Below, piece by piece: positions 27,919 through 64,000 of a stretch of 64,000 nucleotides of DNA. Both the position numbers and the translations under genes were made by a program. Source of the stretch: Haliotis rufescens. Its lineage: Eukaryota. The notes beneath the pieces are model-generated. The model was not told where the DNA came from and made no database searches. It saw nothing but the letters and a program-made list of their open reading frames with translations. Every line of letters begins with the position of its first letter. Positions within the stretch are counted from its first letter, which is position 1. The stretch is from positions 29,822,001 through 29,886,000 of the forward strand of contig NW_025963835.1 of the NCBI RefSeq assembly GCF_023055435.1, read 5' to 3'.

Positions 27919-28024
27919 TTATCCCACAATGGGAACAGGGCTCTGTGTCGTGGTGACGCCACAGAAGGATGGGTCCGTCATCTCCAGATCCAGCTTGTAA
28001 CACTTCGTCTTAGAAAATATGCAT
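27919..28024 (-). CDS. Kz1 exon 4 (Kazal-2 C-half plus tail ...TTTQSPVPIVG*)
   Basis: Acceptor gttttgtag|a, phase 2; CIFSKTKCYKLDLEMTDPSFC; TAA at 27921-27919; AATAAA about 25 nt downstream. Confidence 0.85.
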
Positions 28025-28682
28025 CTACAAAACACAATGATATGGATACTATGTTGTGTATGTCGTCAAAATAGAAACAGCTTGAACTTTCTTGAAAAAT
28101 ATAAATTGACCAGAAAACCACCAACCGCGCCTTATAAAATAAAAATAAAACGTTTTGAAAATATGGTGCTGAGAGTTGATAAAATAATCCGGCTCCTCCC
28201 TTCAAAGAGATATCATTTAAGGTCTTGACACAGTGACACCCTACTCTCTCACCCTAGCAATATGTTAAATGGACGAATAAAGTTTCATTAAAGCAGAATA
28301 GTGTCAAGATTCAGAATGCAGATTTATGCACTTTATGTCTTCTGTATTCAGCGTATGCATGTTTAATGTGTATTGTAATGTATCAGAATAATGCGATGAT
28401 CAGTATCATGCGATCTGTTGTGCGTTTTAGATACTCACGATTTATGTATAATGAATGCTCCCGCGCATATCAGCGCGCATGCGCATTTGTGCCTTGCTTG
28501 CTCGATGATACGAATGAGTCATGTTGTTCGGCGTGGAATAATTCAAATCAAAGATACAACATGCCCCCTCCGACTTATTGATATAAAATATTCTATATTT
28601 CTTTGAAAAAGCGTTTTCCATTTCAGAGGGTAAAATATAAGTTACAAAATATGAAATCAAATAGCACAGGTGTGCAGCTTAC

Positions 28683-29294
28683 GTATTGCTGTAGGTGCGT
28701 CCATCGGTACCGCATACGAGCAGAGTCGGCGAACTTCCACACGTGATGCTGTGTATGTTACGACAGAAGACTTCATGGATGATACCGAAAGCAGGGTCAA
28801 CGCCCTCCGTCGTGCTTGGAGCCACCGTTGATGCCGTGACGGCATCTGACGACATCGGAACCGTATCGGTCCGTGTCATGATGTCCGTTGACCTGATATC
28901 GTCCGTTGTTGACATCAGCATGTTAATGAGGTCACTTGTTGCCTTTACCGATAGTGACGGTTTGTCTGACGAGGTCGCTGGATTGGCTTTCTCAGATGTA
29001 TCGGTGCTGGTTTCCATGGAAACCATAGGTGTCACCATGGTAGCCGTCACCGCATCGGATGACATCGGTGTGTCCGTTGTCGCAGTTACCGGGAGAGACA
29101 TCTTTGGGGAGACTGCTGACGTCTTCCCTGCGTCAGTTGTTGCTGCTGTTGCGGACGGAGAAGATGACGGTTTCTCTGACACTCCAACTTTGCTGGTTGT
29201 AATTATGTCGTTAGTGACCGGAGATTGGGGACAGGGACCGTGATTCAAGAGTGTCACGTTCTCATTGTTACATCTGGCGTTAGCAAAGAGGCAG
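28683..29294 (-). CDS. Kz1 exon 3 (Kazal-1 C-half, about 155-aa Thr/Ser mucin-like linker, Kazal-2 N-half)
   Basis: Acceptor ttcctcag|c, donor ac|gtaagc; CLFANARC...HGPC ... FCRNIHSITCGSSPTLLVCGTDGRTYSN. Confidence 0.9.
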
Positions 29295-29379
29295 CTGAGG
29301 AAAAGAAGATTTGAATAACGTTTGAAAGCTGATACGCGATGTGGAGAAATCATGTCATTGTTATACAAAATACCATCAT

Positions 29380-29908
29380 GCATATACTCGCTGATTGCTA
29401 TAAAAATATGATCATCCATATACTAACTGATTGTTATACAATATACCGTCAAACATATACTCACATACTCACTGATTGTTATATAATATACCGTCAAACA
29501 TATACGCAAATACTCACTGATTATTATGCAATATACCGTCAAGCATATACGCAAATACTCACTGATTGTTATGCAATATATCGTCAAGTATATACGCAAA
29601 TACTCACTGATTGTTATGCAATATACCGTCAAACATATACGCAAATACTCACTGATTTTTATGCAATATACCGTCAAGCATATACGCAAATACTCACTAA
29701 ATGTTATGCAATATACCGTCAAGCATATACGCATATACTCACTGATTGTTATACAATATACCGTCAAGCATATACGCAAATACTCACTGATTGTTATGCA
29801 ATATACCGTCAAGCATATACTCGTATACTCACTGATTGTTATGTTATATACTCGTATACTCACTGATTGTTATACAATATACCGTCAAGAATATACTGAT
29901 ATACTCAC
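29380..29908. repeat. 45-bp minisatellite containing copies of the Kz1 exon-2 splice donor
   Basis: Unit atactcactgattgttatgcaatataccgtcaagcatatacgcaa; reads ...aatca|gtgagtat on the - strand. Confidence 0.9.
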
Positions 29909-30077
29909 TGATTGCTATACAGTACGAGGTCAGTACCGCACACGTTCTCGTCTCCGTGTGGTATGTGTGTAGCACAGGATATAGATAGAATTGAGGCACA
30001 CACCTCCTGTGTATACTTCATCATCAAGTTGTTTATGTCGTGAATAGTTTCCCCATGGTTGATCTTCGAGGCTATGA
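29909..30077 (-). CDS. Kz1 exon 2 (Kazal-1 N-half)
   Basis: Acceptor catcttccag|tc, donor ca|gtgagt; VCASILSISCATHIPHGDENVCGTDLVLYSN. Confidence 0.88.
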
Positions 30078-31548: not shown

Positions 31549-31588
31549 CGTTGATCAGAGAGGAGAAAATTATGACTTTCACAATCAT
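31549..31588 (-). CDS. Kz1 exon 1 (signal peptide MIVKVIIFSSLIN-VIA)
   Basis: ATG at 31588, 13 codons + 1 nt, donor g|gtacgt. Joined CDS is 927 nt = 308 aa. Upstream tttatag and an Inr-like tcagtc. Confidence 0.7.
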
Positions 31589-32788: not shown

Positions 32789-32903
32789 TTATCCGAGCAG
32801 GGGGACAGGGTTCTGTGTCGTGGTGATGACGGGAAGTCCATGTCCTCCACAGTTCACCACCTCCAGGCCAGGCTTGAAGCACGCCACCTTGCTGAACATA
32901 CAC
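32789..32903 (-). CDS. Kz2 exon 4 (...CMFSKVACFKPGLEVVNC...PVPLLG*)
   Basis: Acceptor tctacag|g, phase 2; TAA at 32791-32789; AATAAA downstream. Confidence 0.88.
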
Positions 32904-34053: not shown

Positions 34054-34755
34054 CGAGGGCTGGCTGAAAGGTTCTAAGCCTAAGTGGGATATCTCAATCG
34101 GATGCCAAAGCTCTTGACAGCGGATCAGAAACGTGTCAGATTCCTGACGTCCCGTGACAATTTATGCCGTTTTGAAGCAGATCCCGATGATTTTTCGGCC
34201 CGATTTGTAACCATGGATGAGACCTGGATTCATCACTTCAAACCAGAAACCAAACTTCAGTATTAACAATGGAAGCATCCGGAATCACCCCCCTTCAGTC
34301 TTTTGGGATTTCAAGGGTATTCTGCTGATTGACTATCTTGAAAAAGACCATACTATCAATGGAAGATATTATGCTGACCTACTGAGACAGTTGCGTGAAG
34401 CTATCAAAGCTAAGCGACGGGGAATGCTCACTAAAGGAGTCCTGTTCCACCAAGACAATGCTCCTGTTCACAAATCGATGGTTGCCATGTCAGCGATCCA
34501 TGATTGTGGCTTCGAACCCATTGACCATCCCCCTTATTCACCCGATTTGGCCCCGTCAGACTTCCACCTGTTTCCCAAAATGAAAAAAGGAACTAGCCGG
34601 TCGCCATTTTCCTAGTAATGATGACGTCATTTCCGCTGTGAATGACTTTTTTAGGGTGGCTAAAGAAATTTTTTTTCTTGACCGGCATCCAGGCCTTGCA
34701 GCATCGATGGCAAAAGTGTGTAAACCTGGAAGGGGACTATGAGGGGAAATAAATG
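34054..34755 (+). mobile_element. Internally deleted mariner (DD34D) transposon relic
   Basis: TA + cgagggctggctgaaag TIR; VTMDETWIHH, FHQDNAPVH, HPPYSPDLAPSDFHLF; stops and frameshifts. Confidence 0.93.
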
Positions 34756-34937: not shown

Positions 34938-35276
34938 ATATTGGTGTAGACCTTCCCGTCAGAGCCACATATGTCACTATCAACTCGATTGCCACAGCTA
35001 ATTGCATCGATATTCCTGCAAAACACTTCTTTGATGAGGTCAAGACTAGGATCGTGACCCCAGGTGATGGTGTTCGATGTCGTGGTTGTCACAGTAGGAG
35101 TGGTTGTTGTGACCTTGTTTGACGGGGGGATCGTCTGTGAGGTGACAAGCAGCCCCTGGTCCTTTGTGCTGGGTGAAGGGGGAGTTGTGTGTGGCGCTGA
35201 TGTGATGGGGTCGCAGGCACCATACTTGACGAAATCAACGTCATGATGTTTGCAGCGAGCTTGTGCAAACTTGCAG
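34938..35276 (-). CDS. Kz2 exon 3 (Kazal-1 C-half, 64-aa Thr-rich linker, Kazal-2 N-half)
   Basis: Acceptor tgtttaag|c, donor at|gtaagt; CKFAQARC...YGAC...FCRNIDAISCGNRVDSDICGSDGKVYTN. Confidence 0.9.
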
Positions 35277-36140: not shown

Positions 36141-36366
36141 TGACTCTCGTATGTTTCGCTATTAGAGCCGCACACTTTACTATCAGCCGGCAAGGCGTCA
36201 CAGTGGAGGCCATGGATGTGTTGACACATCGCCGGGTTGTATTTGAGGATCACCTCGTTGATTTGGTCCACGACGCTCTCAGTGACCGGAGGTGTCTGTT
36301 GCTGGCCGCCATGGTGGACTTCGGGGTGGTTATTGGGATGCCCTTTCTGGTCAGTCAGCACAATAA
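36141..36366 (-). CDS. Kz2 exon 2 (His-rich N-terminus plus Kazal-1 N-half)
   Basis: Acceptor gcttcag|tt, donor ca|gtaagt; MCQHIHGLHCDALPADSKVCGSNSETYES. Confidence 0.88.
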
Positions 36367-36697
36367 CTGAAGCAGCACATTGGATGGAAGATGAAGGACT
36401 GAGTGCGCCCTAACAGCAATGCATCACTCGTGACGATTGAACTTATGAATTAATCGATACTTAAGAAGATTCTTAAGTACTATTAACTTTAGGAGTACTT
36501 TTTATGCTAAAACTTTTTTATGAAATTGTTAGATTAAAGAGTAACGTTTGGTATTTCTTAGAAATTTCTAAGACCTCTTTAGCACTCAATACATTTTCAT
36601 GAATACCACCCCAAGTATTGATTTCCACAAAGAGTGATCACTGAATACAAACTGAATTATTCACAATGATCACTATATCTCGAACCCCTAAGGATAC

Positions 36698-39600
36698 TCT
36701 GTGCTCTGAGTATGACCACTGTATGTTCTGTGTATGACATCTGTGTGTTCTGTGTATGGCCACTGTGTGTTCTGTGTTTGATATGTGTGTTCTGTGTATG
36801 GCCACTGTGTGTTCTGTGTATGACCACTGTGTGTTCTGTGTTTGACCATTGTGTGTTCTGTGTATGACATCTGTGTGCTCTGAGTATGACCACTGTATGT
36901 TCTGTGTATGACATCTGTGTGTTCTGTGTATGGCCACTGTGTGTTCTGTGTTTGACATCTGTGTGTTCTGTGTATGGCCACTGTGTGTTCTGTGTTTGAT
37001 ATGTGTGTTCTGTGTATGGCCACTGTGTGTTCTGTGTATGACCACTGTGTGTTCTGTGTTTGACCATTGTGTGTTCTGTGTATGACATCTGTGTGCTCTG
37101 AGTATGACCACTGTATGTTCTGTGTATGACATCTGTGTGTTCTGTGTATGGCCACTGTGTGTTCTGTGTTTGACATCTGTGTGTTCTGTGTATGGCCACT
37201 GTGTGTTCTGTGTATGACCACTGTGTGTTCTGTGTTTGACCATTGTGTGTTCTGTGTATGACAAATGTGTGTTCTGTGTATGACCAATGTGTGTTCTGTG
37301 TATGACCGCTGTGTGTTCTGTGTATGACCACTGTGTGTTCTGTGTTTGACATCTGTGTGTTCTGTGTATGGCCACTGTGTGTTCTGTGTTTGATATGTGT
37401 GTTCTGTGTATGGCCACTGTGTGTTCTGTGTATGACCACTGTGTGTTCTGTGTTTGACCATTGTGTGTTCTGTGTATGACATCTGTGTGCTCTGAGTATG
37501 ACCACTGTATGTTCTGTGTATGACATCTGTGTGTTCTGTGTATGGCCACTGTGTGTTCTGTGTTTGACATCTGTGTGTTCTGTGTATGGCCACTGTGTGT
37601 TCTGTGTATGACCACTGTGTGTTCTGTGTTTGACCATTGTGTGTTCTGTGTATGACAAATGTGTGTTCTGTGTATGACCAATGTGTGTTCTGTGTATGAC
37701 CGCTGTGTGTTCTGTGTATGACCACTGTGTGTTCTGTGTTTGACATCTGTGTGTTCTGTGTATGACATCTGTGTGTTCTGTGTTTGACCACTGTGTGTTC
37801 TGTGTTTGACCATTGTGTGTTCTGTGTATGACATCTGTGTGTTCTGTGTATGACCAATGTGTGTTCTGTGTATGACCAATGTGTGTTCTGTGTATGACCA
37901 CTGTGTGTTCTGTGTATGACCACTGTGTGTTCTGTGTATGACATCTGTGTGTTCTGTGTTTGACCACTGTGTGTTCTGTGTATGACATCTGTGTGTTCTG
38001 TGTTTGACATCTGTGTGTTCTGTGTATGACCAATGTGTGTTCTGTGTATCACCACTGTGTGTTCTGTGTATGACCACTGTGTGTTCTGTGTATGGCCGCT
38101 GTGTGTTCTGTGTATGACATCTGTGTGTTCTGTGTACAACATCTGTGTGTTCTGTGTACAACATCTGTGTGTTCTGTGTATGACCACTGTGTGTTCTGTG
38201 TTTGACCACTGTGTGTTCTGTGTTTGACCACTGTGTGTTCTGTGTATGACCACTGTGTGTTCCGGTTTGACATCTGTGTGTTCTGTGTATGACCACTGTG
38301 TGTTCTGTGTATGACCGCTGTGTGTTCTGTGTATGACATCTGTGTGTTCTGTGTATGACATCTGTGTTTTCTGTGTATGACATCTGTTTGTTCCGTGTTT
38401 GACCACTGTGTGTTCTGTGTATGACATCTGTGTGTTCTGTGTTTGACATCTGTGTGTTCTGTGTATGACCACTGTGTGTTCTGTGTATGACCACTGTGTG
38501 TTCTGTGTTTGACCACTGTGTGTTCTGTGTATGACCACTGTGTGTTCTGTGTATGACCACTGTGTGTTCTGTGTTTGACCACTGTGTGTTCTGTGTATGA
38601 CCACTGTGTGTTCTGTGTATGACATCTGTGTCCTGTGTATGACCAATGTGTGTTCTGTGTATGACTATCATGTGTCCTGTGTATGACCACTGTGTGTCCA
38701 GTGTATGACTATCATGAGTCCTGTGTATGACATCTGTGTGTTCTGTGTATGACCACTGTGTGTTCTGTGTATGGCCGCTGTGTGTTCTGTGTATGACATC
38801 TGTGTTTTCTGTGTATGACATCTGTTTGTTCCGTGTTTGATCACTGTGTGTTCTGTGTATGACATCTGTGTGTTCTGTGTTTGACATCTGTGTGTTCTGT
38901 GTATGACCACTGTGTGTTCTGTGTATGACCACTGTGTGTTCTGTGTTTGACCACTGTGTGTTCTGTGTATGACCACTGTGTGTTCCGGTTTGACATCTGT
39001 GTGTTCTGTGTATGACCACTGTGTGTTCTGTGTATGACCGCTGTGTGTTCTGTGTATGACATCTGTGTGTTCTGTGTATGACATCTATGTTTTCTGTGTA
39101 TGACATCTGTTTGTTCCGTGTTTGACCACTGTGTGTTCTGTGTATGACATCTGTGTTTTCTGTGTTTGACATCTGTGTGTTCTGTGTATGACCACTGTGT
39201 GTTCTGTGTATGACCACTGTGTGTTCTGTGTATGACCACTGTGTGTTCTGTGTATGACCACTGTGTGTTCTGTGTTTGACCACTGTGTGTTCTGTGTATG
39301 ACCGCTGTGTGTTCTGTGTATGACATCTGTGTTCTGTGTATGACATCTGTGTGTTCTGTGTATGACATCTGTGTTTTCTGTGTATGACATCTGTGTGTTC
39401 CGTGTTTGACCACTGTGTGTTCTGTGTATGGCCACTGTGTGTCCAGTGTATGACTATCATGTGTCCTGTGTATGACCACTGTGTGTTCTGTGTATGACTA
39501 TCATGTGTCCTGTGTATGACCACTGTGTGTCCAGTGTATGACTATCATGTGTCCTGTGTATGACATCTGTGTGTTCTGTGTATGACCACTGTGTGTTCTG

Positions 39601-41683
39601 TGTATGGCCGCTGTGTGTTCTGTGTATGACATCTGTGTTTTCTGTGTATGGCATCTGTTTGTTCCGTGTTTGACCACTGTGTGTTCTGTGTATGACATCT
39701 GTGTGTTCTGTGTTTGACATATGTGTGTTCTGTGTATGACCACTGTGTGTTCTGTGTATGACCACTGTGTGTTCTGTGTTTGACCACTGTGTGTTCTGTG
39801 TATGACCACTGTGTGTTCTGTGTATGACCACTGTGTGTTCTGTGTTTGACCACTGTGTGTTCTGTGTATGACCACTGGGTGTTCTGTGTATGACCACTGT
39901 GTGTTCTGTGTATGACCACTGTGTGTTCTGTGTTTGACCACTGTGTGTTCTGTGTATGACCACTGTGTGTTCTGTGTATGACCGCTGTGTGTTCTGTGTA
40001 TGACATATGTGTGTTCTGTGTATGACCACTGTGTTTTCTGTGTATGACATCTGTGTGTTCCGTATTTGACCACTGTGTGATCTGTGTATGGCCACTGTGT
40101 GTCCAGTGTATGACCACTGTGTGTTCTGTGTTTGACCACTGTGTGTTCTGTGTATGACATCTGTGTTCTGTGTATGACATCTGTGTTTTCTGTGTATGAC
40201 ATCTGTGTGTTCCGTGTTTGACCACTGTGTGTTCTGTGTATGGCCACTGTGTGTCCGGTGTATGACTATCATGTGTCCTGTGTATGACCACTGTGTGTTC
40301 TGTGTTTGACCACTGTGTGTTCTGTGTATGACCAATGTGTGCTCTGTGTATGGCCGCTGTGTGTTCTGTGTATGACACCTGTGTGTTCTGTGTACGACAT
40401 CTGTGTGTTCTGTGTATGACCACTGTGTGTTCTGTGTATGACCACTGTGTGTTCTGTGTATGACCACTGTGTGTTCTGTGTATGACCTCTGTGTGTTCTG
40501 TGTATGACCGCTGTGTGTTCTGTGTATGACATCTGTGTTCTGTGTATGACATCTGTGTGTTCTGTGTATGACATCTGTGTTTTCTGTGTATGACATCTGT
40601 GTGTTCCGTGTTTGACATCTGTGTGTTCTGTGTATGGCCACTGTGTGTCCAGTGTATGACTATCGTGTGTCCTGTGTATGACCACTGTGTGTTCTTTGTT
40701 TGACCACTGTGTGTTCTGTGTATGACCACTGTGTGTTCTGTGTATGACCACTGTGTGTTCTGTGTATGGCCGCTGTGTGTTCTGTGTATGACATCTGTGT
40801 GTTCTGTGTACAACATCTGTGTGTTCTGTGTACAACATCTGTGTGTTCTGTGTATGACCACTGTGTGTTCTGTGTATGACCACTATGTGTTCTGTGTATG
40901 ACCACTGTGTGTTTTGTGTATGACCACTGTGTGTTCTGTGTGTGACCACTGTGTGTTCTGTGTATGACCACTGTGTGTTCTGTGTATGACCACTGTGTGT
41001 TCTGTGTATGACCACTGTGTGTTCTGTGTATGACCTCTGTGTGTTCTGTGTATGACATCTGTGTGTTCTGTGTATAACATCTGTGTGATCTGTGTTTGAC
41101 CACTGTGTGTTCTGTGTTTGACCACTGTGTGTTCTGTGTATGACCACTGTGTGTTCTGTGTTTGACATCTGTGTGTTCTGTGTATGACATGTGTGTGTTC
41201 TGTGTATGACCACTGTGTTTTCTGTGTATGACATCTGTGTGTTCCGTATTTGACCACTGTGTGATCTGTGTATGGCCACTGTGTGTCCAGTGTATGACCA
41301 CTGTGTGTTCTGTGTTTGACCACTGTGTGTTCTGTGTATGACCACTGGGTGTTCTGTGTATGACCACTGTGTGTTCTGTGTATGACCACTGTGCGTTCTG
41401 TGTTTGACCACTGTGTGTTCTGTGTATGACCACTGTGTGTTCTGTGTATGACCGCTGTGTGTTCTGTGTATGACATATGTGTGTTCTGTGTATGACCACT
41501 GTGTTTTCTGTGTATGACATCTGTGTGTTCCGTATTTGACCACTGTGTGATCTGTGTATGGCCACTGTGTGTCCAGTGTATGACCACTGTGTGTTCTGTG
41601 TTTGACCACTGTGTGTTCTGTGTATGACCACTGGGTGTTCTGTGTATGACCAAGGTGTGTTCTGTGTATGACATCTGTGTGTA
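36698..41683. repeat. About 5-kb array of 22-bp units (tgtgtgttctgtgtatgaccac) in Kz2 intron 1
   Basis: Direct; roughly 225 units, with recurring variant blocks. Confidence 0.97.
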
Positions 41684-42066: not shown

Positions 42067-42103
42067 GGGCAGACAGTAGGAGGCAGACGGTGGACGTACG
42101 CAT
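42067..42103 (-). CDS. Kz2 functional signal-peptide exon (MRTSTVCLLLSA-LIVLTDQKG)
   Basis: agcaacATG at 42103, 12 codons + 1 nt, donor c|gtgagt, phase 1 fits 36366. Upstream acceptor ttcctgtag at 42169. Joined CDS is 717 nt = 238 aa. Confidence 0.75.
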
Positions 42104-42687: not shown

Positions 42688-42730
42688 CAATAGCCAGTCA
42701 AACAACCAGTGGTACCAAGGGACAGTGCAT
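42688..42730 (-). pseudogene. Disabled signal exon homologous to Kz3/Kz4 exon 1 (MHCPLVPLVV*LAI)
   Basis: Same 43-nt length and the same ctggctattg|gtgagtctgg end as Kz3. In-frame TGA at 42700-42698. Confidence 0.7.
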
Positions 42731-42964: not shown

Positions 42965-43235
42965 TCGTCTAAGGCGCTGCGATTCGCTGTGCAGAGTGGC
43001 GTCCCTTGGGCACGCCAGAAACCTATTATTATTATTATTAAACATATTTTATTGTCCAAAAAGACAAAGGGATTGGGCACAAGTGCGGCACTTATTACCG
43101 CCTTCTCCCTATTACCGCCTTCTCCGCCAGAAACCTATAATTGTGGGTTCGAATCCCGGTTCGCCCCGATTATGTTTCTAGGTTTGTCAGCACCATACCC
43201 GTACTCGTGGGTTTCACCGAAGTGGTTTACGTCTG
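42965..43235 (+). mobile_element. SINE family 4 interrupted by a 98-bp retro-insertion
   Basis: 14-bp TSD cgccagaaacctat at 43013-43026 and 43125-43138 around a - strand (TAA)n-tailed insert. Confidence 0.8.
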
Positions 43236-45560: not shown

Positions 45561-45678
45561 TTATCCAATCAGAATAGACTTCGGTGTTGACTTCAAGGGG
45601 AGGCCGTTCTCGTGACACTTTGCGGGGTTGGTCGGCTCCAGGTCAGGCTTGAAACATTTCATTTTGGCAAAAAGGCAC
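45561..45678 (-). CDS. Kz3 exon 4 (CLFAKMKCFKPDLEPTNPAKC...KSILIG*)
   Basis: Acceptor ttatccaag|g, phase 2; TAA at 45563-45561. Confidence 0.87.
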
Positions 45679-45779: not shown

Positions 45780-45874
45780 ACTACTACTACTACAACAACT
45801 ACTGCTACTACTACCAAAACATCTACTACTACTGCTGCTTCTACAATAACAACAAGTACTACTACAACTACTAT

Positions 45875-45914
<40 letters not shown>

Positions 45915-45916
45915 GA

Positions 45917-45950
<34 letters not shown>

Positions 45951-45972
45951 GCAGCAACTACAACTACTACTA
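45780..45972. repeat. (CTA)n microsatellite in Kz3 intron 3
   Basis: Direct. Confidence 0.9.
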
Positions 45973-45994: not shown

Positions 45995-46243
45995 TGGTTT
46001 GTGTACACCTTCCCATCCGTGGCACAGATGTCGGAGTCTACGTGATTCCCACAGATGATGGTGTTGATGTTGGTACAGAAAACGTCTTTGATCAGGTCAT
46101 ATCCCGGGTCATGGCCCCACGTGACGGTGCTTGGAAGGATGGTGGTCATGTGACTGGCTGGAGATGGCGTGACGTCACAGGCTCCTTTGTGATTGAACAG
46201 TATGGTGGAAGATGGCCGACATCTTGCTTTGGCAAACACGCAG
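45995..46243 (-). CDS. Kz3 exon 3 (33-aa linker)
   Basis: Acceptor cacattcag|c, donor ca|gtagga; CVFAKARC...KGAC...FCTNINTIICGNHVDSDICATDGKVYTN. Confidence 0.9.
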
Positions 46244-47587: not shown

Positions 47588-47777
47588 TGGTCGGGGTAGG
47601 TGACTTGGTCGGTGCCACACATTGTCTCGTGGTCTGTGACTTTGTGAAGACTGCAGTCAAATTTCAAGATGGCGGCGCACAACGTGGCGGAGAAAGGATT
47701 TTTGTGTGGGTGGTTGAGGACCTCTTCCACTGGCCTCGCATGAGCATTCAGTGTCCATTGAATATCGGACAGAAGCA
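47588..47777 (-). CDS. Kz3 exon 2 (Kazal-1 N-half)
   Basis: Acceptor gttttag|tg, donor ca|gtgagt; LCAAILKFDCSLHKVTDHETMCGTDQVTYPD. Confidence 0.9.
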
Positions 47778-49514: not shown

Positions 49515-51065
49515 AAACACTAAACTACCTTACACTTGGGTAACACTACACTGTAGGTGCACTTAGTTTACACTAAACTACCTTACACTTGGGTAATACT
49601 ACTCTGTAGGTGCACTTAGTTTACACTAAACTACCTTACACTTGGGTAACACTACACTGTAGGTGTACTTAGTTTACACTAAACTACCTTACACTTGGGT
49701 AATACTACTCTGTAGGTGCACTTAGTTTACGCTAAACTACCTTACACTTGGGTAATACTACTCTGTAGGTGCACTTAGTTTACACTAAACTACCTTACAC
49801 TTGGGTAACACTACACTGTAGGTGCACTTAGTTAACACTAAACTACCTTACACTTAGATAACAGTACACTGTAGGTACACTTGGTTCCCACTAAACTACC
49901 TGTACACTTAGATAACAGAACACTGTAGGTGCACTTAGTTTACACTAAACTACCTGTACACTTAGATAACAGTACACTGTAGGTACACTTTGTTCCCACT
50001 AAACTACCTGTACACTTAGATAACAGTACACTGTAGGTACACTTTGTTCCCACTAAACTACCTGCACACTTAGATAACAGTACACTGTAGGTGCACTTAG
50101 TTTACACTAAACTACCTTACACTTGGGTAACACTACACTGTAGGAACACTTGGTTCCCACTTAACTACCTGTACACTTAGATAACACTACACTGTAGGTA
50201 CACTTGGTTCCCACTAAACTACCTGTACACTTAGATAACACTACACCGTAGGTACACTTGGTTCCCACTAAACTACCTGTACACTTAGATAACAGTACAC
50301 TGTAGGTACACTTGGTTCACACTAAACTACCTGTACACTTAGATCACAGTACACTGTAGGTACACTTTGTTCACACTAAACTACCTGTACACTTAGATAA
50401 CAGTACACTGTAGGTACACTTTGTTCCCACTAAACTACCTGTACACTTAGATAACAGTACACTGTAGGTACACTTTGTTCACACTAAACTACCTGTACAC
50501 TTAGATCACAGTACACTGTAGGTACACTTTGTTCATACTAAACTACCTGTACACTTAGACAACAGTACACTGTAGGTACACTTGGTTCCCACTAAACTAC
50601 CTGTACACTTAGATAACAGTACACTGTAGGTACACTTTGTTCACACTAAACTACCTGTACACTTAGATAACAGCACACTGTAGGTACACTTTGTTCCCAC
50701 TAAACTACCTGTACACTTAGATAACAGTACACTGTAGGTGCACTTAGTTTACACTAAACTACCTTACACTTGGGTAACACTACACTGTAGGAACACTTGG
50801 TTCCCACTTAACTACCTGTACACTTAGATAACAGTACACTGTAGGTGCACTTGGTTCCCACTAAACTACCTGTACACTTAGATAACAGCGCACTGTAGAA
50901 ACACTTGGTTCCCACTTAACTACCTGTACACTTAGATAACAGTACACTGTAGGTGCACTTGGTTCCCACTAAACTACCTGTACACTTAGATAACACTACA
51001 CTGTAGGTACACTTAGTTAACACTAAACTACCTGTACACTTAGATAACACTACACTGTAGGTACT
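49515..51065. repeat. About 54-bp minisatellite (taaactacctgtacacttagataacagtacactgtaggtacacttggttcccac), about 29 units
   Basis: Direct. Confidence 0.95.
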
Positions 51066-51920: not shown

Positions 51921-51963
51921 CAATAGCCAGCTGAACACACAGCAGTACCCGAGAAAACCGCAT
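51921..51963 (-). CDS. Kz3 exon 1 (signal peptide MRFSRVLLCVQLAI-VLLS)
   Basis: ATG at 51963, 14 codons + 1 nt, donor g|gtgagt. Joined CDS is 600 nt = 199 aa. Confidence 0.85.
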
Positions 51964-52148: not shown

Positions 52149-53468
52149 TATTTTTAGTAAATTTATAGTACCTAATAAAGTCGATATATTGAATTTAATA
52201 TCATATATACAAATATGAAATTTTGGAGCTCGATAGTCACATGATGTTGTTGTACAAAGGCATTGCAAACTGTTTGTTGTCGTGTCACATAAGGCCACAA
52301 GGTAGCACTGATCTCAGTATCTCGTGTGACAGCCCCGGGCAACAATCACGGCTCTTCATCTCCTCGGCGCTGACTGGATAAGTGTACGAATTCTGTCCTG
52401 CGGAAATCTGTGTCATTCTGTTTGTAACGCGTTGGTCAGTCTCGACGGCCAGGGCAAGTCGTTGATGTTGGCATTATGAAGGTAGTCTACCGTGACACGA
52501 GCTGTGAACGGTGGAGCGTTGTCCGGTTGAAACAGCTCACTTTGGCGGTCAATGTTTGGTAGAAGTTGAGGTTGTAGAATTTGATTCATGTAGCGATTGG
52601 CTGTCAAATCTCCCTGAACCACAACCACGTCAGATCTCGTGGAGTAGGATATGCCCCCTCCCCAATCCCCAACCATGACACTGAAATTGTCGAATTCAGG
52701 AACACAATATGGGGCAAAACGCTCATTTCGACAACGATAAACACGTTGTCTTCCATCTCGCCGGTGAAGAAGAAATTTTGATTCATCGCTAAATCATACC
52801 CGTCTCCTGTCGATGGATCTGTTGCAAAACAGGGACGATAACTGGTCTTCTGGATCGCATTCCAGCCTCGCGAAGATGGTTCCTGACAGTCTGGTCCGAT
52901 ATCCCCCTCAAACCAGGGGTGCGTCCTGTAGTCTCCGTAGCTGTTGCATTGCGATGACGTAGGTTGAACAGTCGAATGTAGCGATCCTGTGCAGGGGTGG
53001 TAACTCTTGGTCGGCCTGTTCTCGGACGGTCTGCAGTGCAATTGAACTGTGTGTATCGGTCACAAAGGCGGCAAATAATGCTGTGGTGGACTTTGAAGTG
53101 GCGTGCAACAGAAGAGGCGATTGCCCTCTTTTGCTACGTCCTATGGCGATGTTCCGATCGGCAGCTCTGAGTCTCGGCATTTTCAAACTTATTGGCTTGT
53201 GCTTTCCTTTTCATAGCCACTAACACGAGTTACAAATGCCATAACTTGCACATGGATTTTGCTTTACTGTTTTCCTCTATGACATTTTTGAACAAGTGTG
53301 AAAATAATGTGGTTTAAAACATTGCAAATCGACAATGGCTGCATTTTAACGCACCTTTTGTCGAATATCAGGCCACATTTTCCAATAACAGATATCCAAT
53401 TTATATACCGCATTGTTTGTGTTGTCAGGTTCTACATACTACCTGTGCGTTTCTATTTTTGAAAAGTG
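52149..53468 (-). mobile_element. Second Tc1-like relic, just upstream of Kz3
   Basis: MPRLRAADRNIAIG..., WGGGISY...QGDLTANRY..QIL, FQPDNAPPFTAR..., LPWPSR. Right end ...gaaaagtg-ta; left end approximate. Confidence 0.85.
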
Positions 53469-56752: not shown

Positions 56753-57403
56753 CTGAAAGCTAAATGTCTGAAGCCACTAGTTCTAGGTTAATTAAAAAAT
56801 GTTTCTAATTCCAAGTGGGGAGGAGATCAGTTGACCCTTCTTCACTTGTATAGATCAGTTATCTGTTCTAAACTCGATGATAGCGCCATCATTTATGGTG
56901 TTGCTTCCAAAAAGTAACCTTAAATTACTCGATCTAATGCATCAGCAAGGTCTAAGATCACAAAATTATATTCAAATGACTCAAACCCTGCATACCAACG
57001 TGTGATTAATCCCCTTCGTGAGGATCTTTACAAAAACATGTCATCTATTATACCGCCTCTTGGAATAAGAATTAAACCTTTTATTTCCGCTGCTAATATT
57101 GAACGCAATGACCTTACCTGACTACCCGATCGATTCAGTTACTAATTGACACCAGCAAGTATTGCGGGGAATCCATTCCAACCTGGAATTCCAATGTTGA
57201 ATAAAATCTTAATTTCCATCGCCGTGATACAGAAAACAATGTAAATTCATTTTGATCCTTGTTACTGGTGTTTAAATACCACAGGCATATTTACAGTACA
57301 GGAATCACTGTCAGCATTGCTGAAATACAGGTCCATCATATGGTACTTGAAATATGCATTTCGTCACATTGGACGTGAATTTATCCAATCAGAGTAGACT
57401 TCA

Positions 57404-57623
57404 ATGTCAGCTTAATGTGGGAGGAAACCCCGAAGTGATGCAGGTCTCAGACGTTTACCACTTCGGTGAAATCCACCGGCACGGGTATGGTGCTGACAAA
57501 CCAAGAAACATAATTGGAGCGAATCGGGATTCGAACCCACAATCAAAGGCTTCTGGCGTGCCCAAGGGACGCAACTCTGCACAGCGAATTGCGGCGCCTT
57601 AGACGACTGGGCCACCCGTGCCC
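57404..57623 (-). mobile_element. SINE family 4, 3'-truncated by the deletion that removed Kz4 exon 4
   Basis: Intact head gggcacgggtggcccagtcgtctaaggcgcc; the tail present at 4100-4170 is missing here. Confidence 0.88.
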
Positions 57624-58129
57624 ACTACAACAATTAAGCCTGACATGGGGGTCATGATCTTTCCCAACAACAGCAACAATCTTACTGGTTCGTGTACACC
57701 TTCCCGTCCGTGGCACAGAGATCGGAGTCTACAGTGTTCCCACAGACGATGGTATCGATGTTGGTACAGAAAACGTCTTTGATCAGGTCATATCCTGGGT
57801 CATGGCCCCACGTTGCGGTGATTGGAGGAATGGTGGTCATGTGACTGGCTGGAGATGGCGTGACGTCACAGGCTCCTTTGTGATTGAACAGTATGGTGGA
57901 AGATGGCCGACATCTTGCTTTGGCAAACACGCAGCTGAATGTGGATGGAAAAATAGAAGCAGTATTTTGGAACTGCAAATATATAGTTTATTCGTGTAAT
58001 GTAGAGTGGGAAAGTGATACATTTACATTCTTGGTGTAATCTTTAATAGAAGTATAGCATTCCTGTGTTAATATTGAATGGCAAGCATAGTATTGACTAT
58101 TGAATGGGAAGTGTTAGAAATGAATGAAA

Positions 58130-58365
58130 ATTAGTATATTCCTTGTGTAATATTGAATGAAAATTGGTATATTCCTGGTGTAATATTGAATGGAAAGTAG
58201 TATATTCCTGGTGTAATATTGAATGGAAAGTAGTATATTCCTGGTGTAATATTGAATGGAAAGTAGTATATTCCTGGTGTAATATTGAATGGAAAGTAGT
58301 ATATTCCTGGTGTAATATTGAATGGAAAGTAGTATATTCCTGGTGTAATATTGAATGGAAAGTAG
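58130..58365. repeat. 33-bp minisatellite (attcctggtgtaatattgaatggaaagtagtat), about 7 units
   Basis: Direct; degenerate counterpart in Kz3 at about 46370-46520. Confidence 0.9.
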
Positions 58366-60552
58366 GTGCCCAATACTGTAATATTGAACAAGTACATATT
58401 ATAGTTGAGCAGTCCTAAAGTATGAGCAAGCAGTATATCCATTGGCAATATTGAAGGGAGGGTGGATATGCCTGATGTTATGTTATATTGAACTGCAGTT
58501 ATGGTGAATGGAAAGTAATATATTCCTGATTTATCACCGAATGTGGTAATGTACCAAGGGTAATATTGAATGCAAATAGCGCTTGAGTGAGTATGGTTTT
58601 AGGCCACTTTTAGCAATATTCCAGCAATACCAAGGCCGGGAACACCAGAAATGGGCTTCACACATAGAACCCATGTGGGGAATCGAACCTGGGTCGAACC
58701 TTCGGCTGGACGATTGAATGCTAAAACGCAGCCCCTTGAATGGAAATAACCAACAGTATATACTTTATAAAACTGTATACACTACGTTCCTCCATTCTTC
58801 GTGAATACATGTGGTCGCGATGTAGTGTAGTTGCTAGTTGGAACCATATCAGCCAACGGTAGGATTTGCAAAAGGTTCATGGATGGACTTGTGATGATTT
58901 TACTTCAGTGAGTTACACACGGAGTAGTATAGACGATGGGGGTTCTACATCATAAGGACCAGGTCCAGCTCTTGACAATATGCCCCCACTTCAAAAACGG
59001 ACTTGTGTCACAGCTACACCGTATACCGTGTATTCACGGGTAATGAGGAACTTATTGAATACAAACACGTAAAGTGTTGAAGATTATCAGAGTTCATCAA
59101 GCACAAGTCATGGCTACCCGGCTTCTGTTTGCATCCTCTACATTTAGGCCTACTCATTTACGATTATTCGGCCCTGAACACACTCACTGGTCGGGGTAGG
59201 TGACTTGGTCAGTGCCACACATTCTCTCATGACCTGTGACTTTGTGTTGACTGCAGTCATACTTCAAGATGGCGGCGCACATCGTGGCGGAGAAGGGATG
59301 TCCGTGGGTGTGATTGAGGACCTGTTCCACTGAATGCGTCGCCCTTGCATCACCACTCAGTGTCCATTGGATATCGGACAGAAGCACCAAAACATATTTT
59401 GGTTACACTACATAACATACACTACAATATATGTAGACGTTGGTACATTACGCTATAAGTACACATTGGGAATATAATATGCCACAAACGTAGGAGATAG
59501 TGGCTCAACTTCGAAATTTGCACTCATCAGTGAGAGAAACACCGAGTTTGCACTTTGCTGGTACTTTACTATTATCGGGTAAAATCAACTCTGCTGGACA
59601 GACATGCATAAAGTTCTTCCAGAGATGCTTCTGGTGAGTCGACCTATGCTGGCTTGACTATTGTTGTTCCACTTATAAGTAAGAGCAACAGCGAGTTCAT
59701 TGAGAGTGGTAGGTGGGTTTTGACGTTGACGTTGACTGTCTGCCAATGACATCCCAGGCGTGTTCAATGGGGGGAAAGGCCTGAACTGAGTGTTGGCCAT
59801 GGCATGATATGGATGTTTTGCTGTTATAGGAACGGGGTCACAATCCTTGCACGATGATCATGTGCCTTTTCATGTTGAAAGTTGAAACGTTGCCCAACAC
59901 ATTGTGCAAATGGCACCACGAGTGGTGCAATGATGTTGACCTGATAGTATTGACCTGTGACTGCCATAGACAATATGAAGCGAAGTTCGGCCGGTCATTG
60001 TGATACCACCCCATACCATTCTGGTCTCAATCCACGATCATGCTGTACGACGTTAACGCCCATAAAACGGTCATTAGGTCTTCTCCAAACCCGATTCTCT
60101 GGTCATGGAAGTTGAGAGTGAACCTCGATTCGTCAGAAAACATGACTATAGCACATTATATCCATTATCCCAGTGCTTACATTCCCTACACCGTATCGTG
60201 CATGTAAATGTCATCTGTGCAGATGATGCACCGTCTGGGCATGTACTCGTACACCAGTTGCGTGTTGCAACCGGTCCGTTATCTGAGTGGCAGTTTGCAG
60301 CCGATTTCTTAATGTCATCGTTCTGATAAATCTGTCCTGTGCTGGAGTTGTTGCCCTTGGGCGTCCCGAGCATCGTCGATCGCCAACGTTATGTGTTCAC
60401 TGTTATCGGGCCAACAATCTGCTGATGACAGACTGAGAAATATGCAGTGTTTAGGCAACTATATTCTGATGTGTGCCCACCTGCTACATGATTTTGCCAT
60501 GTGTCGTTCAGCAAGTTGCAAAAGTCACTTGATCAATGCTCTTGCTTCCTTT

Positions 60553-60709
60553 GGGGCGGTCGGGTAGCCTGGTGGTTACGCCGAAGACCCGGGTTCGATT
60601 CCCGACATGGGTACAATGTGTGAAGCCCATTTCTGGTGTCCCCCGCCGCGATATTGCTGGAATATTGCTAAAAACAGTTGAAAACCATATTCACTCACTT
60701 ATTCACTCA
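60553..60709 (+). mobile_element. SINE family 1, specific to Kz4, nested in the Tc1 relic
   Basis: 14-bp TSD ctcttgcttccttt at 60539-60552 and 60710-60723. Confidence 0.92.
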
Positions 60710-61624
60710 CTCTTGCTTCCTTTGTGATTAAATGTGCTGAATAAAGTGTCTTTGGGCGTTTGGTTCCAATATAAATGTGTCTGCACACACCGAGTCCGAG
60801 TGCCAAATCTGTCATAACACCCATTTCACGTGCTGTCCGAGGCCACAAGCCTCAAGACTGTCACAATGTGTTTCAGAGCTTGATTTCTTCGGACATTTTC
60901 TTTCATTGCCAGACATTTGTATATGTTCCCTTTTCTTCCACCTCCAAACATACTACCCCCCTCTATTTTTGTATATTATACTCCATGGTAGGTACACTTG
61001 TGAACCACTACATGAAAAGCGCCTCAGTTGTCTAGTGGTCTGGAACCTAGTTTCTGCCCTGAAGGTATGTGGTTCGATCTCAGCTGAAGGATGTTATAAC
61101 TTGTTGTTACCCTTCCTTGGGTTCGGCGTTAGGGGATACAATAAGGACTAGACGGATCAGAGTTATCATAATGTGTCTGAGTTGGTTATCTGTGTCATGG
61201 TGTCTTAGTTGACTAGCAGTATAAAACAGGCATTAGTGTGAAGCAGTACAAGCAAACTGAATACACACGTTGGTACAAAGGGATTTCATGATATTACATA
61301 TTCACATGACTTATTCAATGCTAAAAGGTATCATTGACGTACACCAAACCAAGAGGCACTCTTTGCTGACAATGGACTAAAGGTACACTTAATTGGGATA
61401 CAGCTTTAGTGATACTGTACTGTAGGTATTGGTTTACACTAAACTACCTGTTCAATTGGGTAACACTACACTGTAGGTACGCAAGGCGCACATATTATTG
61501 CAGTGCACTTGGCTTATTGTCTGGCTTGACGTTTAATATTTATACCTTACTACCGGTAAACATGGGTAACACGACATTGTAGATACACTTGGCTTAAGTA
61601 CTTGGCTTGTACTTGTAGGTACAC

Positions 61625-62044
61625 TAGAAATAAAGGAGATCAGTGAGACCGCCTCATCTTTTATATATTTAAATCTATGCATACAGATTCAGAGTAAGGA
61701 AACACTCTGCCCAGGAAACTGTCCACTGTCAACTTTCCCTTCATGTTGAGCAATACTCAAGCAGCTCCAGCCTTTGGTGTTTACATTTCACAACTTTTGA
61801 GATACAATCGATCATACTTTTTCTACCAAGATTTCAAAGAGCGCCATAAGGCTCTTGCTCAGAAATTGTTGATCAAAGTTACAACATTCAAGGTCTCAGT
61901 AAATCTTTCAAAATGTTTTGTGGTGGACATTTGTTGGACATTTCCAAATTTGACGCATCAGTGACAATAACGATGTCGGATGCAGTTCCTTATTTTGACT
62001 TTTACAATATGTTCCCTTGTTTTTTCAGGTGAACAATTGACTTG

Positions 62045-62113
<69 letters not shown>

Positions 62114-62285
62114 CGGGTGACACCGGTGAGGCAGGATATGCTCACCTTTTCGCGAACACCTCGTAATGTTACTTTTTGATAGTGATTCGTAAACACAAGT
62201 TTATGATGTGGTCAGAATCGTACTATCGATTCTGCTTTATTCAGAAATTTCTACTGGACATGGAAAGGGTTTAGTCGCTTTGTTT
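61625..62285 (+). mobile_element. Penelope-like retroelement RT C-terminus and 3' region, with a (GT)n insert
   Basis: KEISETASSFIYL...VNFPFMLSNTQAAPAFGVYISQLLRY. Related 3' pieces at about 30130-30430, 19090-19147, 42345-42530 (-) and 54190-54345 (-). Confidence 0.7.
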
Positions 62286-64000
62286 ACTTAATTAAGTGAG
62301 CCAAACCACATGCACACTTGGATTACAAGTACACCTGATGTTCACACTCCAGTGACTCTTGTGACACAGGAGTCTTATCAAAACTCACGTGGCATGCATG
62401 TTATGTGCATTAAGTGTCAAACTAGATCACCTGACATGGACTCCTCGATGGAGTCACGGTCCTTTTATGCATGTTGGTGGGAAACTGATGCCAGTGGACG
62501 TTCACGCAAACATTCGCGTTTGCCTTCACAATTAAGTCACTTTTTATCAGAAGACTTTGTGCACCAATGTTTACAGCTTTAATGAGGTACATAATTAGTT
62601 GTTTCTTTTACTCCTAATTTAGCTATGCTTGGCTTGTACCTTGTTATTAATTGAAATTTAGTGGATGTGGAACTAACTTATTATGTTAAAGTCACCATCG
62701 TCTTTAGGGTAACATATTAAGAATGTTGAGGCACATGGTGCGAAGACAAGTCATTCTAACATTTGCACAAAACACTGCAGTCAATACTTATCAAGGGAAA
62801 TATTCATACATATAACTCGTCAACGCCAGACAACAACCAGTCTCCATTGTCTGCTGAAACAGATTCTAATTGGCGTAAAAAGGCAATAGTGGTGAAACTT
62901 ATATGAATGGATCACTAATAATCATTGCGGAAACCAGGGGTTCGCGAAAAGGGTTAGTATGTCCACATCTAATGCCATTGCTCAGTACAGCATGAAGTTG
63001 CGATATACGAGATCAATCAACTGATATTCCGGGAGAGAAGAGGGAGTGGGAGATTTTGTCGGGTGGGGTGGGGGTTGTTTGGTGGGTGGCTAGGGACAGA
63101 ATAGTTGTTTTGTACTGACTTATCTGACCTGATACCTGCAGTCACATCACATGGTACAGTTACAGATTAAAAGACTCTGTACCATGTGTACAGATTCAAA
63201 AAGTTGAGGCCAGACTCACCTATAGCCAGCTGAACAAACAGCAGTACCCGGGAAAACCACATGCTTTGTTTCAGGTGGGGAGAAGTCAGCGTGGCGTGTA
63301 CGTGGAGAATAGTCCTTGCAATGCTGACCTCTTGAGATAAGGCCAAGAACTTTTGACATATATTGAATGATATTGCTACACACGCTTAAAGAATCTGAAC
63401 TATTTGTAGAACGTGGTTTGTATCAGGTCAAATCCTTAAGAAGAGACTTGAATGGTTCAACTATCAGTGTTATATTCTCAAGTTGAAACGCGAAGGTTAA
63501 CCCAAAAATCGGTACGTACAGAACCTAATTGTGAAATCAGTAAATTGTTACTGTCGATTCCCATATTAAAACAATACGTGAAACCAACAAACAACCAACA
63601 AATGGTTTATAATCAACACATGTACTACAAAAAATCACTAATTTACAAATCAATACAAATTACTGCACAACAATTACAATGCCAGTACACAAGAGAGCAG
63701 TAGTACAATATTCAATGGCAATACATATTATGATAGCAGTGGTCTCGATCAAATACAAAAACACAGTGGTGATAGCAAAAGTCAGTGAAAATGAAATATA
63801 TACACTTAGCAGCGACAGCAGGCAATCTTCCGAGGCAGGCCGAAGAAGGGATTCGGTGATGAGTGATCCACACACGAAAGCTGGTCTTAATGTGATGAAA
63901 TGTGAGAGATACGTAAAACGACATTGTCCCGTTATATACAAGCTACTGGAAATGTCCATACCGTGCCCTCGCCGCATGAAAAAATTTCGATAACATACTG

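What the first reader, a model, noticed from the sequence alone, without database searches (positions are those of the whole stretch)
27919..63262. Tandem cluster of four secreted double-Kazal genes with an atypical Kazal fold and a tunable mucin spacer
Seen: four - strand paralogs can be spliced in frame with identical architecture (signal exon, phase 1; Kazal-1 N-half, phase 2; Kazal-1 C-half + linker + Kazal-2 N-half, phase 2; Kazal-2 C-half + tail). They give 308, 238 and 199 aa proteins plus one broken copy. All complete domains have C-x7-C-x8..11-C-x10-C-x6-C-x9..13-C. The Thr/Ser/Pro linker is about 155, 64, 33 and 33 aa. Established: C(G/A)(T/S)(D/N)..(T/V/L)Y...C.F....C is the Kazal signature, but canonical inhibitors have C2-x7-C3 ending in PVC. 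Here the loop is longer, PVC is absent, nominal P1 residues are T, S, A, N, L and Q, and each domain is preceded by an amphipathic helix (DLIKEVFC.NI..I.C; NNLMMKYTQEVC). Inference: a lineage-specific Kazal subfamily that may act as a bivalent, O-glycosylated cross-linker of variable reach (mucus, shell matrix or adhesive) rather than a classical protease inhibitor.
Basis: partly seen in the sequence, partly recalled or inferred. Interest (0 to 1): 0.85.

Follow-up and report, generated by a model that had tools for sequence, protein, structure and literature searches.

The report
Abalone tandem double-Kazal secreted protein genes
This stretch of the red abalone genome holds four copies (three intact, one dead) of a seven-copy tandem family of small secreted proteins with two ordinary Kazal domains joined by a mucin-like linker; all are already in RefSeq, none has a tested function, and the family is found only in molluscs.

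Summary
Four minus-strand paralogs share one 4-exon plan (intron phases 1, 2, 2). They give 308, 238 and 199 aa proteins plus one dead copy.

The window is Haliotis rufescens. The three intact models match RefSeq proteins XP_046351664.2, XP_046351665.1 and XP_046351667.1. These are named "uncharacterized", "tomoregulin-2-like" and "agrin-like". The dead copy is annotated as a 115-aa fragment.

The cluster is cut by the window edge. It has seven tandem copies, and two more lie on another contig.

The "atypical Kazal fold" is not supported:
- Pfam Kazal_1 and Kazal_2 score above threshold.
- The C-terminal half has the follistatin/agrin spacing.
- The AlphaFold model of domain 1 lies on turkey ovomucoid third domain (Z 6.1, 49 of 51 residues).

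What is real is a mollusc-wide subfamily (abalones, clams, an oyster) with:
- a helical C1-C2 segment,
- a His-rich N-terminus,
- a Thr/Ser/Pro linker of 17-155 aa,
- often a C-terminal hydrophobic-Gly end.

Paralogs are under purifying selection. Function is untested. The most likely role is a two-headed, glycosylated protease-binding protein of a secretion. The non-inhibitory cross-linker idea stays open. This is a new member of a known kind, of modest interest.

The parts
31549..31588 (-). Gene A exon 1: ATG plus 13 codons plus 1 nt (phase 1), donor GTACGT
   Evidence: N-terminus identical to the start of RefSeq proteins P0011/P0001.
29909..30077 (-). Gene A exon 2: end of signal peptide, N-terminal stretch, Kazal-1 N-half (C1-C3)
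28683..29294 (-). Gene A exon 3: Kazal-1 C-half, 155-aa Thr/Ser/Pro linker, Kazal-2 N-half
   Evidence: 100% identical to P0011 residues 71-273.
27919..28024 (-). Gene A exon 4: Kazal-2 C-half, tail ending in Gly, stop
42067..42103 (-). Gene B exon 1 in use (MRTSTVCLLLSA plus 1 nt, donor GTGAGT); unrelated to exon 1 of C and D
   Evidence: Same N-terminus in RefSeq P0009/P0003.
42688..42730 (-). Gene B dead ancestral signal exon, homologous to exon 1 of C and D, with in-frame TGA at 42698-42700
36141..36366 (-). Gene B exon 2 (His-rich N-terminal stretch, Kazal-1 N-half)
34938..35276 (-). Gene B exon 3 (Kazal-1 C-half, 64-aa linker, Kazal-2 N-half)
   Evidence: 100% identical to P0009 residues 89-200.
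32789..32903 (-). Gene B exon 4 (Kazal-2 C-half, tail, stop)
51921..51963 (-). Gene C exon 1 (MRFSRVLLCVQLAI plus 1 nt, donor GTGAGT)
   Evidence: Same N-terminus as P0025.
47588..47777 (-). Gene C exon 2
45995..46243 (-). Gene C exon 3 (33-aa linker)
   Evidence: 100% identical to P0025 residues 79-160.
45561..45678 (-). Gene C exon 4
63220..63262 (-). Copy D exon 1 (MWFSRVLLFVQLAI plus 1 nt)
59188..59386 (-). Copy D exon 2; the acceptor dinucleotide at 59387-59388 is GG where copy C has AG
57686..57934 (-). Copy D exon 3 (open; part of the truncated 115-aa RefSeq model P0019)
57403..57685 (-). Dispersed (SINE-like) repeat where intron 3 and the coding start of exon 4 of copy D should be
   Evidence: alignment with copy C. 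(other copies at 3887-4098, 42965-43235 and elsewhere).
57381..57402 (-). Remnant of copy D exon 4: last 6 codons and the stop, followed by a conserved 3' UTR

Best explanation
The region holds four of the seven tandem copies of a mollusc-specific gene family in Haliotis rufescens. Copies A, B and C are intact. Copy D is a species-specific dead duplicate.

Each intact 4-exon gene encodes a small protein with these parts in order:
- a signal peptide,
- a short His-rich N-terminal stretch,
- Kazal domain 1,
- a disordered Thr/Ser/Pro linker (33-155 aa), probably O-glycosylated,
- Kazal domain 2,
- a 13-19 aa tail ending in hydrophobic-Gly.

The domains are ordinary Kazal folds. Their C-terminal half is of the follistatin/agrin sequence type and their C1-C2 segment is helical.

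Most likely mechanism (inferred): the proteins are secreted into a glycan-rich fluid or gel, in the gut or on the surface. There they act as two-headed binders that hold a conserved partner through the C2-C3 loops. That partner is most probably a serine protease of elastase or subtilisin-like preference, which would make them specialised Kazal inhibitors. The glycosylated linker would keep the two heads apart and soluble.

Shown here: gene structure, domain identity, copy number, range of the family, purifying selection.
Inferred: secretion, glycosylation, protease binding.
For: Gene models.

Match to RefSeq proteins of H. rufescens: exon 3 of each is 100% identical, and lengths and N-termini agree.

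Domain identity:
- Pfam Kazal_2 37.5 bits against a cut-off of 22.8; Kazal_1 33.5 against 21.
- Profile hits in PDB: agrin 1e-37, follistatin 1e-14, FSTL3, then rhodniin and ovomucoid.
- AlphaFold: both domains pLDDT 72-92, linker below 50.
- Domain 1 against OMTKY3: Z 6.1, rmsd 2.2 A, 49 of 51 residues. Every Foldseek and VIA hit contains a Kazal domain.

Seven tandem copies plus two on C223.

One-to-one orthologs in H. cracherodii. Relatives in H. rubra, H. asinina, Mactra (three adjacent genes), Mercenaria and Saccostrea, with the same architecture.

dN/dS between paralogs: 0.13-0.54 in exon 4, 0.21-0.42 in exon 3 between intact copies (0.70 for the pair with dead copy D), and 0.4-1.3 in exon 2.

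Signs of an inhibitor-type ancestry:
- Domain 2 of the bivalve members has a 7-residue C2-C3 loop, ending in P(I/L)C in most of them; the two Mercenaria-type examples carry an acidic P1'.
- The Asn two residues before C4 is kept in domain 2.
Against: No expression or protein evidence could be obtained here. The tissue is unknown.

In Haliotis the C2-C3 loops have 8-12 residues, not 7, and lack Pro before C3.

The loops are not hypervariable. The domain-2 loop is nearly invariant among paralogs C-G. A domain-1 motif (H, then G, then D/H-E) is shared by abalones and bivalves. This is unlike Kazal inhibitor families that evolve under diversifying selection.

The nearest sequence relatives with solved structures (agrin, follistatin, FSTL3) are not protease inhibitors.
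Confidence: 0.55

Rival explanations
1. Non-inhibitory bivalent binder or cross-linker. The two Kazal heads bind a matrix, mucus or metal partner, and the O-glycosylated linker sets the reach. The protein would be structural, in mucus, an adhesive or the shell matrix.
For: - The follistatin/agrin type of Kazal domain is usually non-inhibitory.
- Loops are longer than canonical and conserved rather than hypervariable.
- A His/Gly-rich N-terminus is shared with bivalve members.
- Linker length differs five-fold between paralogs.
Against: - No evidence of presence in mucus or shell. The H. asinina shell proteome paper read here reports Kunitz and WAP inhibitors, not Kazal (PMC2989941).
- Linker length is fixed between orthologs.
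- Domain 2 of the bivalve members has a 7-residue loop, with Pro before C3 in most.
Confidence: 0.3
2. Follistatin-like antagonist of a secreted growth factor (a TGF-beta family ligand or similar), as the automatic names 'follistatin-like' and 'tomoregulin-like' suggest.
For: The profile matches follistatin and FSTL3. A different abalone Kazal gene named tomoregulin-2 varies with growth rate in H. discus hannai (PMC4661900).
Against: - There is no FOLN/EGF-like subdomain: only six Cys per domain.
- There is no EGF domain or membrane span.
- The Tsc20 primer from that paper maps about 27.8 Mb away on the same contig, to another Kazal gene.
- Nine fast-duplicating copies are unlike a conserved developmental regulator.
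Confidence: 0.08
3. The models are computational only, and the copies are not expressed or are decaying.
For: No RNA data could be examined here. Copy D is dead.
Against: - Open frames, intact splice sites and dN/dS well below 1 in exons 3 and 4.
- One-to-one orthologs of the same length in a second species.
Confidence: 0.04

Closest known systems
Follistatin/agrin-type Kazal-like domains (Pfam Kazal_2 PF07648; FS modules of agrin, follistatin, FSTL3, SPARC, tomoregulin)
   Same: Spacing C3-x10-C4-x6-C5-x9..13-C6 and a C2-C3 loop longer than 7. The motif CG(S/T)DG.TY.N.C.FA.A.C is shared. These are the best profile hits in PDB.
   Different: No N-terminal FOLN/EGF-like subdomain. C1-x7-C2 instead of C1-x3-C2 (from my reading of the follistatin sequence). 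The C1-C2 segment is helical. The proteins are small, consisting only of two such domains and a mucin-like linker.
Classical and non-classical Kazal serine protease inhibitors (ovomucoid third domain, the two-headed thrombin inhibitor rhodniin, infestin)
   Same: Same fold: Z 6.1 to OMTKY3, TM-score 0.79 (normalised to the target) to infestin 1. C1-x7-C2 as in ovomucoid. Two heads on one chain as in rhodniin. In domain 2 of the bivalve members the loop has 7 residues, ending in P(I/L)C in most.
   Different: C4-x6-C5 instead of x2-3. In Haliotis the C2-C3 loops have 8-12 residues without Pro before C3. The loops are conserved rather than hypervariable. The linker is long and Thr-rich.
Tomoregulin (TMEFF1/2), the name NCBI gave some copies
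   Same: Two follistatin-type Kazal modules in tandem.
   Different: No EGF domain, no transmembrane segment and no cytoplasmic tail. The protein ends 13-19 residues after the last Cys.
Other mollusc 'agrin-like' multi-Kazal proteins (Aplysia P0036, Plakobranchus P0038)
   Same: Same domain subtype (C1-x8-C2, x10, x6, x13), picked up by the family profile.
   Different: Three domains with short linkers, no His-rich N-terminus and no hydrophobic-Gly end. These are more distant relatives outside the family proper.

Membership tests
Kazal domain (Pfam PF00050 / PF07648) | Profile score above the curated threshold | tested here: met
   For P0001, the 96%-identical H. cracherodii ortholog of gene A: Kazal_2 37.5 bits (cut-off 22.8) and Kazal_1 33.5 bits (cut-off 21). 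Single exons hold only half domains and score below threshold.
Kazal domain (Pfam PF00050 / PF07648) | Six cysteines in the Kazal order, with the conserved Tyr after C3 | tested here: met
   7 / 8-12 / 10 / 6 / 9-13 spacing in every complete domain. C and Y are invariant in the alignment.
Kazal domain (Pfam PF00050 / PF07648) | Fold: short beta hairpin, one alpha helix, C-terminal strand | tested here: met
   AlphaFold models. Domain 1 against OMTKY3: Z 6.1, rmsd 2.2 A, 49 of 51 residues. Domain 2 shows the same secondary-structure order but was not superposed on its own.
Kazal domain (Pfam PF00050 / PF07648) | Disulfides 1-5, 2-4, 3-6 | not testable with these tools
   Model coordinates are not returned. 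Mass spectrometry or a solved structure is needed.
Standard-mechanism Kazal protease inhibitor | Canonical reactive-site loop: C2-x7-C3 with P1 two residues after C2, and usually Pro before the last loop residue | tested here: not met
   Haliotis domains have loops of 8-12 residues without that Pro. Domain 2 of the bivalve relatives does have 7 residues, with P(I/L)C in most.
Standard-mechanism Kazal protease inhibitor | Loop-supporting Asn two residues before C4 (Asn33 of OMTKY3) | tested here: inconclusive
   Kept in domain 2 (Y.N.C nearly invariant). Domain 1 has N, S or D at this position.
Standard-mechanism Kazal protease inhibitor | Measured inhibition of a serine protease | not testable with these tools
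   A bench assay is needed.
Follistatin (FS) module | N-terminal EGF-like FOLN subdomain with four extra cysteines before the Kazal part | tested here: not met
   Only six Cys per domain. The stretch before C1 is a helix without Cys.
Tomoregulin (TMEFF) | EGF domain and transmembrane segment after the two FS modules | tested here: not met
   The proteins end 13-19 residues after C6 of domain 2. Pfam finds only Kazal families.
Mucin-like O-glycosylated linker | Disordered, Thr/Ser/Pro-rich segment | tested here: met
   T+S+P is 0.30-0.52 of the linker. pLDDT is below 50.
Mucin-like O-glycosylated linker | Actual O-glycans | not testable with these tools
   Glycoproteomics is needed.

The most novel reading that the evidence does not exclude
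A family shared by gastropods and bivalves of helix-capped double-Kazal glycoproteins is not a protease inhibitor at all. It would have a conserved His/Gly-rich N-terminus, a domain-1 loop motif shared between gastropods and bivalves (His ... Gly-Asp/His-Glu), and a C-terminal hydrophobic-Gly end fit for alpha-amidation. It would act as a metal- or ligand-binding bivalent component of a molluscan secretion (gut mucus, crystalline style or pedal mucus), or as a secreted signal. The paralogs would differ mainly in spacer length.
Probability: 0.2. Interest if true: 0.55.

Novelty: new member of a known kind. Interest (0 to 1): 0.3.

Why it matters
It tidies up a set of RefSeq genes that carry misleading automatic names (tomoregulin-like, follistatin-like, agrin-like). 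They form one mollusc-specific family with a defined architecture.

It also gives a small, recent case of several gene-family processes in one place: tandem duplication, replacement of a signal exon, linker expansion, and death of one copy through a repeat insertion.

If the proteins turn out to be abundant in abalone gut or foot secretions, they would be candidates for protecting those secretions from proteases. That would interest abalone aquaculture and disease work. Nothing here changes what is known about Kazal domains.

Tried and rejected
RNA evidence:
- As a result, no junction or tissue evidence was obtained.

Exons were searched one by one by reference. Lengths and junction codons were worked out by arithmetic. 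The full-length proteins used for Pfam, PDB, AlphaFold and the tree are database proteins returned by the search tools.

Literature:
- No paper names these loci.
- Searches for Haliotis with Kazal, and for abalone with tomoregulin, agrin-like or follistatin-like, found no characterisation.
- The H. discus hannai 'tomoregulin-2' transcript Tsc20 is expressed mainly in hepatopancreas. I tested whether it is a member of this cluster. Its primers do not match the window. The forward primer maps with one mismatch about 27.8 Mb away on the same contig, to another Kazal gene. It is a lead for the wider group only.
- A 'tomoregulin-2-like' protein in the shipworm crystalline-style proteome (PMC8561940) could not be tied to this family.

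Rejected ideas:
- A new fold.
- Hypervariable reactive-site loops. Column entropy in the loops is only slightly above that of the scaffold.
- A recent tandem repeat as the origin of the long linker of gene A. Tandem Repeats Finder finds only a 20-nt trace.


Full report
WHAT IS THERE

A motif scan of all six frames finds eight Kazal N-half motifs (C..C..CG[TS][DN]..Y). All are on the minus strand, in four pairs, and there are none elsewhere in the window. Each is followed at the same codon position by a GT donor (GTGAGT, GTAAGT, GTAAGC, GTAGGA or GTAAGA) in phase 2. The matching C-halves (C-x6-C-x9..13-C) each start one base after an AG.

Signal exons end in phase 1 before GTGAGT or GTACGT. 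The stop of A and the ATG of D are the finding's two ends.

I did not build joined sequences for any search. Exons were searched singly by reference.

IDENTITY OF THE GENOME AND THE GENES

The exon-3 translation of A finds a 308-aa NCBI protein of Haliotis cracherodii at 96% identity. Its cluster mate from Haliotis rufescens, XP_046351664.2, is 100% identical over exon 3. Likewise:
- B matches XP_046351665.1, 'tomoregulin-2-like', 238 aa.
- C matches XP_046351667.1, 'agrin-like', 199 aa.
- D is annotated only as a 115-aa fragment, XP_048251833.1.

The N-termini of these proteins confirm the signal exons I found for A (31549-31588) and B (42067-42103).

THE BROKEN COPY AND THE REPLACED EXON

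Copy D has GG where C has the AG acceptor of intron 1. A 283-bp dispersed repeat (57403-57685) sits where intron 3 and most of exon 4 should be. Other copies of that repeat lie at 3887-4098 and 42965-43235. Only the last six codons, the stop and the 3' UTR of exon 4 remain.

On the tree D groups with copy E. It has no counterpart among the H. cracherodii proteins.

In gene B the exon homologous to exon 1 of C and D is still recognisable at 42688-42730 but carries an in-frame TGA. The exon in use lies about 600 bp downstream and is unrelated in sequence.

THE CLUSTER IS LARGER THAN THE WINDOW

A search of the whole assembly finds three more complete copies directly to the right of the window:
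- E at about 29,891,752-29,895,583,
- F at 29,898,081-29,901,250,
- G at 29,907,436-29,910,219.

Their products are XP_046351666.1, XP_046351669.2 and XP_046351670.2. Two further tandem copies lie on contig C223 (LOC124145430 and its neighbour). Nothing lies in the 10 kb to the left.

WHAT THE DOMAINS ARE

Single exons hold half domains and score below Pfam's thresholds. The full protein P0001, the H. cracherodii ortholog of A, scores Kazal_2 37.5 bits and Kazal_1 33.5 bits. Both are above the cut-offs.

A profile of 20 family members hits, in the PDB:
- agrin (1e-37, nine domains),
- follistatin (1e-14),
- FSTL3 (1e-11),
- and only then rhodniin, ovomucoid and other inhibitors.

That covers C3-x10-C4-x6-C5-x9..13-C6 and a C2-C3 loop longer than seven. 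C1-x7-C2 is the ovomucoid spacing.

AlphaFold models of B and C give pLDDT 72-92 for both domains and below 50 for the linker. Every Foldseek hit is a Kazal-containing chain. Domain 1 superposes on turkey ovomucoid third domain over 49 of 51 residues (rmsd 2.2 A, Z 6.1).

So the fold is not atypical. The one structural peculiarity is that the C1-C2 segment, and in domain 2 about ten residues before C1, is predicted helical at pLDDT around 80.

THE FAMILY

An exhaustive HMMER scan with exon 3 of C against 1.84 billion representatives gives only six true relatives. Profile searches add more. Members found:
- four Haliotis species,
- three adjacent genes in the clam Mactra antiquata,
- several genes in Mercenaria,
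- one in the oyster Saccostrea echinata.

The oyster protein has the whole architecture: signal peptide, His/Gly-rich start, domain 1 with the loop motif His...Gly-Asn-Glu, a Thr/Ser/Pro/Ala linker, the F-C-x-N...I-x-C start of domain 2, and a tail ending in Val-Val-Gly.

More distant three-domain 'agrin-like' proteins of Aplysia and Plakobranchus share the domain subtype but not the architecture.

On the tree the Haliotis copies form one group apart from the bivalves (support 92/92). H. rufescens and H. cracherodii have one-to-one orthologs for A, B, C, E, F, G and the C223 gene.

Linker lengths are 155 (A), 64 (B), 32-33 (C-G), 53-59 (C223) and 17-68 in bivalves. They are the same in both species for A (155) and B (64) and within one residue for the C-G group; the C223 ortholog differs (59 against 53).

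SELECTION

Between paralogs C-G, dS is 0.08-0.59. dN/dS is:
- 0.13-0.54 in exon 4,
- 0.21-0.42 in exon 3 between intact copies (0.70 for the D-E pair),
- 0.4-1.3 in exon 2, which holds the N-terminal stretch and the first half of domain 1.

The copies are therefore kept by selection, with the N-terminal part freest to change.

The C2-C3 loops are only slightly more variable than the scaffold. Mean column entropy is 1.9 and 1.7 bits in the loops against 1.5-1.7 bits in the C4-C6 parts. The domain-2 loop is nearly invariant among C-G.

FUNCTION

Nothing was found in the literature on these loci.

Two weak leads point to the digestive system for similarly named mollusc proteins:
- A different abalone Kazal gene is expressed mainly in hepatopancreas (PMC4661900). 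Its primer maps about 27.8 Mb away on the same contig.
- A 'tomoregulin-2-like' protein occurs in the shipworm crystalline style (PMC8561940).

Neither can be tied to this family.

I therefore rank the readings as follows.

(1) Secreted, glycosylated two-headed protease-binding proteins.
- The prior for proteins made only of Kazal domains favours this.
- Domain 2 of the bivalve members has a 7-residue loop that ends in P(I/L)C in most of them.
- The supporting Asn is kept in domain 2.

- The C-terminal half is of the follistatin/agrin type.
- The Haliotis loops are long and conserved.
- The N-terminus is His-rich.

(3) Growth-factor antagonists. This is unlikely, because the FOLN subdomain is missing.

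VERDICT

It is wrong on the 'atypical fold'. It is incomplete on the size of the cluster. The genes are already annotated. This is a new, uncharacterised member group of a very well known kind, and interest is modest.

Noticed in passing
window 36696-41682: A 5-kb satellite with a 22-bp unit, about 227 copies at 87% match. It fills most of intron 1 of gene B and creates long spurious ORFs on the minus strand.
   Followed up: partly
window 43651-45230 and 49517-51064: Two minisatellites. One has a 30-bp unit in 53 copies, between gene C and the signal exons of B. The other has a 54-bp unit in 29 copies, inside intron 1 of gene C.
   Followed up: partly
window 29420-29851, 58121-58365, 45780-45972: Intronic repeats inside the Kazal genes: a 45-bp unit in 9.6 copies in intron 2 of A, a 33-bp unit in 7.4 copies in intron 2 of D, and an (ACT)n run of 64 copies in intron 3 of C.
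   Followed up: partly
window 34084-34615 (+), 48358-48753 (-), 52604-53186 (-), 59585-60400 (-): ORFs that look like fragments of Tc1/mariner-type transposases, lying in introns and spacers of the cluster. This is judged from the translations only.
   Followed up: no
C-termini of the family proteins (window 27922-27960, 32792-32830, 45564-45600): All cluster copies, the oyster protein and one unnamed bivalve-like protein end in two hydrophobic residues plus Gly (LLG, IVG, LIG, LVG, VVG, IIG). A terminal Gly kept across gastropods and bivalves would fit C-terminal amidation, but this is speculation.
   Followed up: partly
domain-1 C2-C3 loop and N-terminal stretch (window exon 2 of A-D): A loop motif of His, then Gly, then Asp/His-Glu before C3 is shared by abalone and bivalve members. 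The stretch after the signal peptide is rich in His, and in His-Gly in bivalves. A metal-binding role is conceivable.
   Followed up: partly
L013 (G000:C57:2050614-2053633), minus strand around 1456-1686: Another Kazal exon with the same C-x7-C-x8-C-GTDGVTY layout lies 27.8 Mb away on the same contig. It matches the forward primer of the H. discus hannai 'tomoregulin-2' transcript Tsc20 with one mismatch.
   Followed up: partly
G000:C223:29498272-29507536 (L019, L022): Two tandem copies of a related double-Kazal gene (product XP_046371152.2, 210 aa) lie about 6.5 kb apart on another contig.
   Followed up: partly
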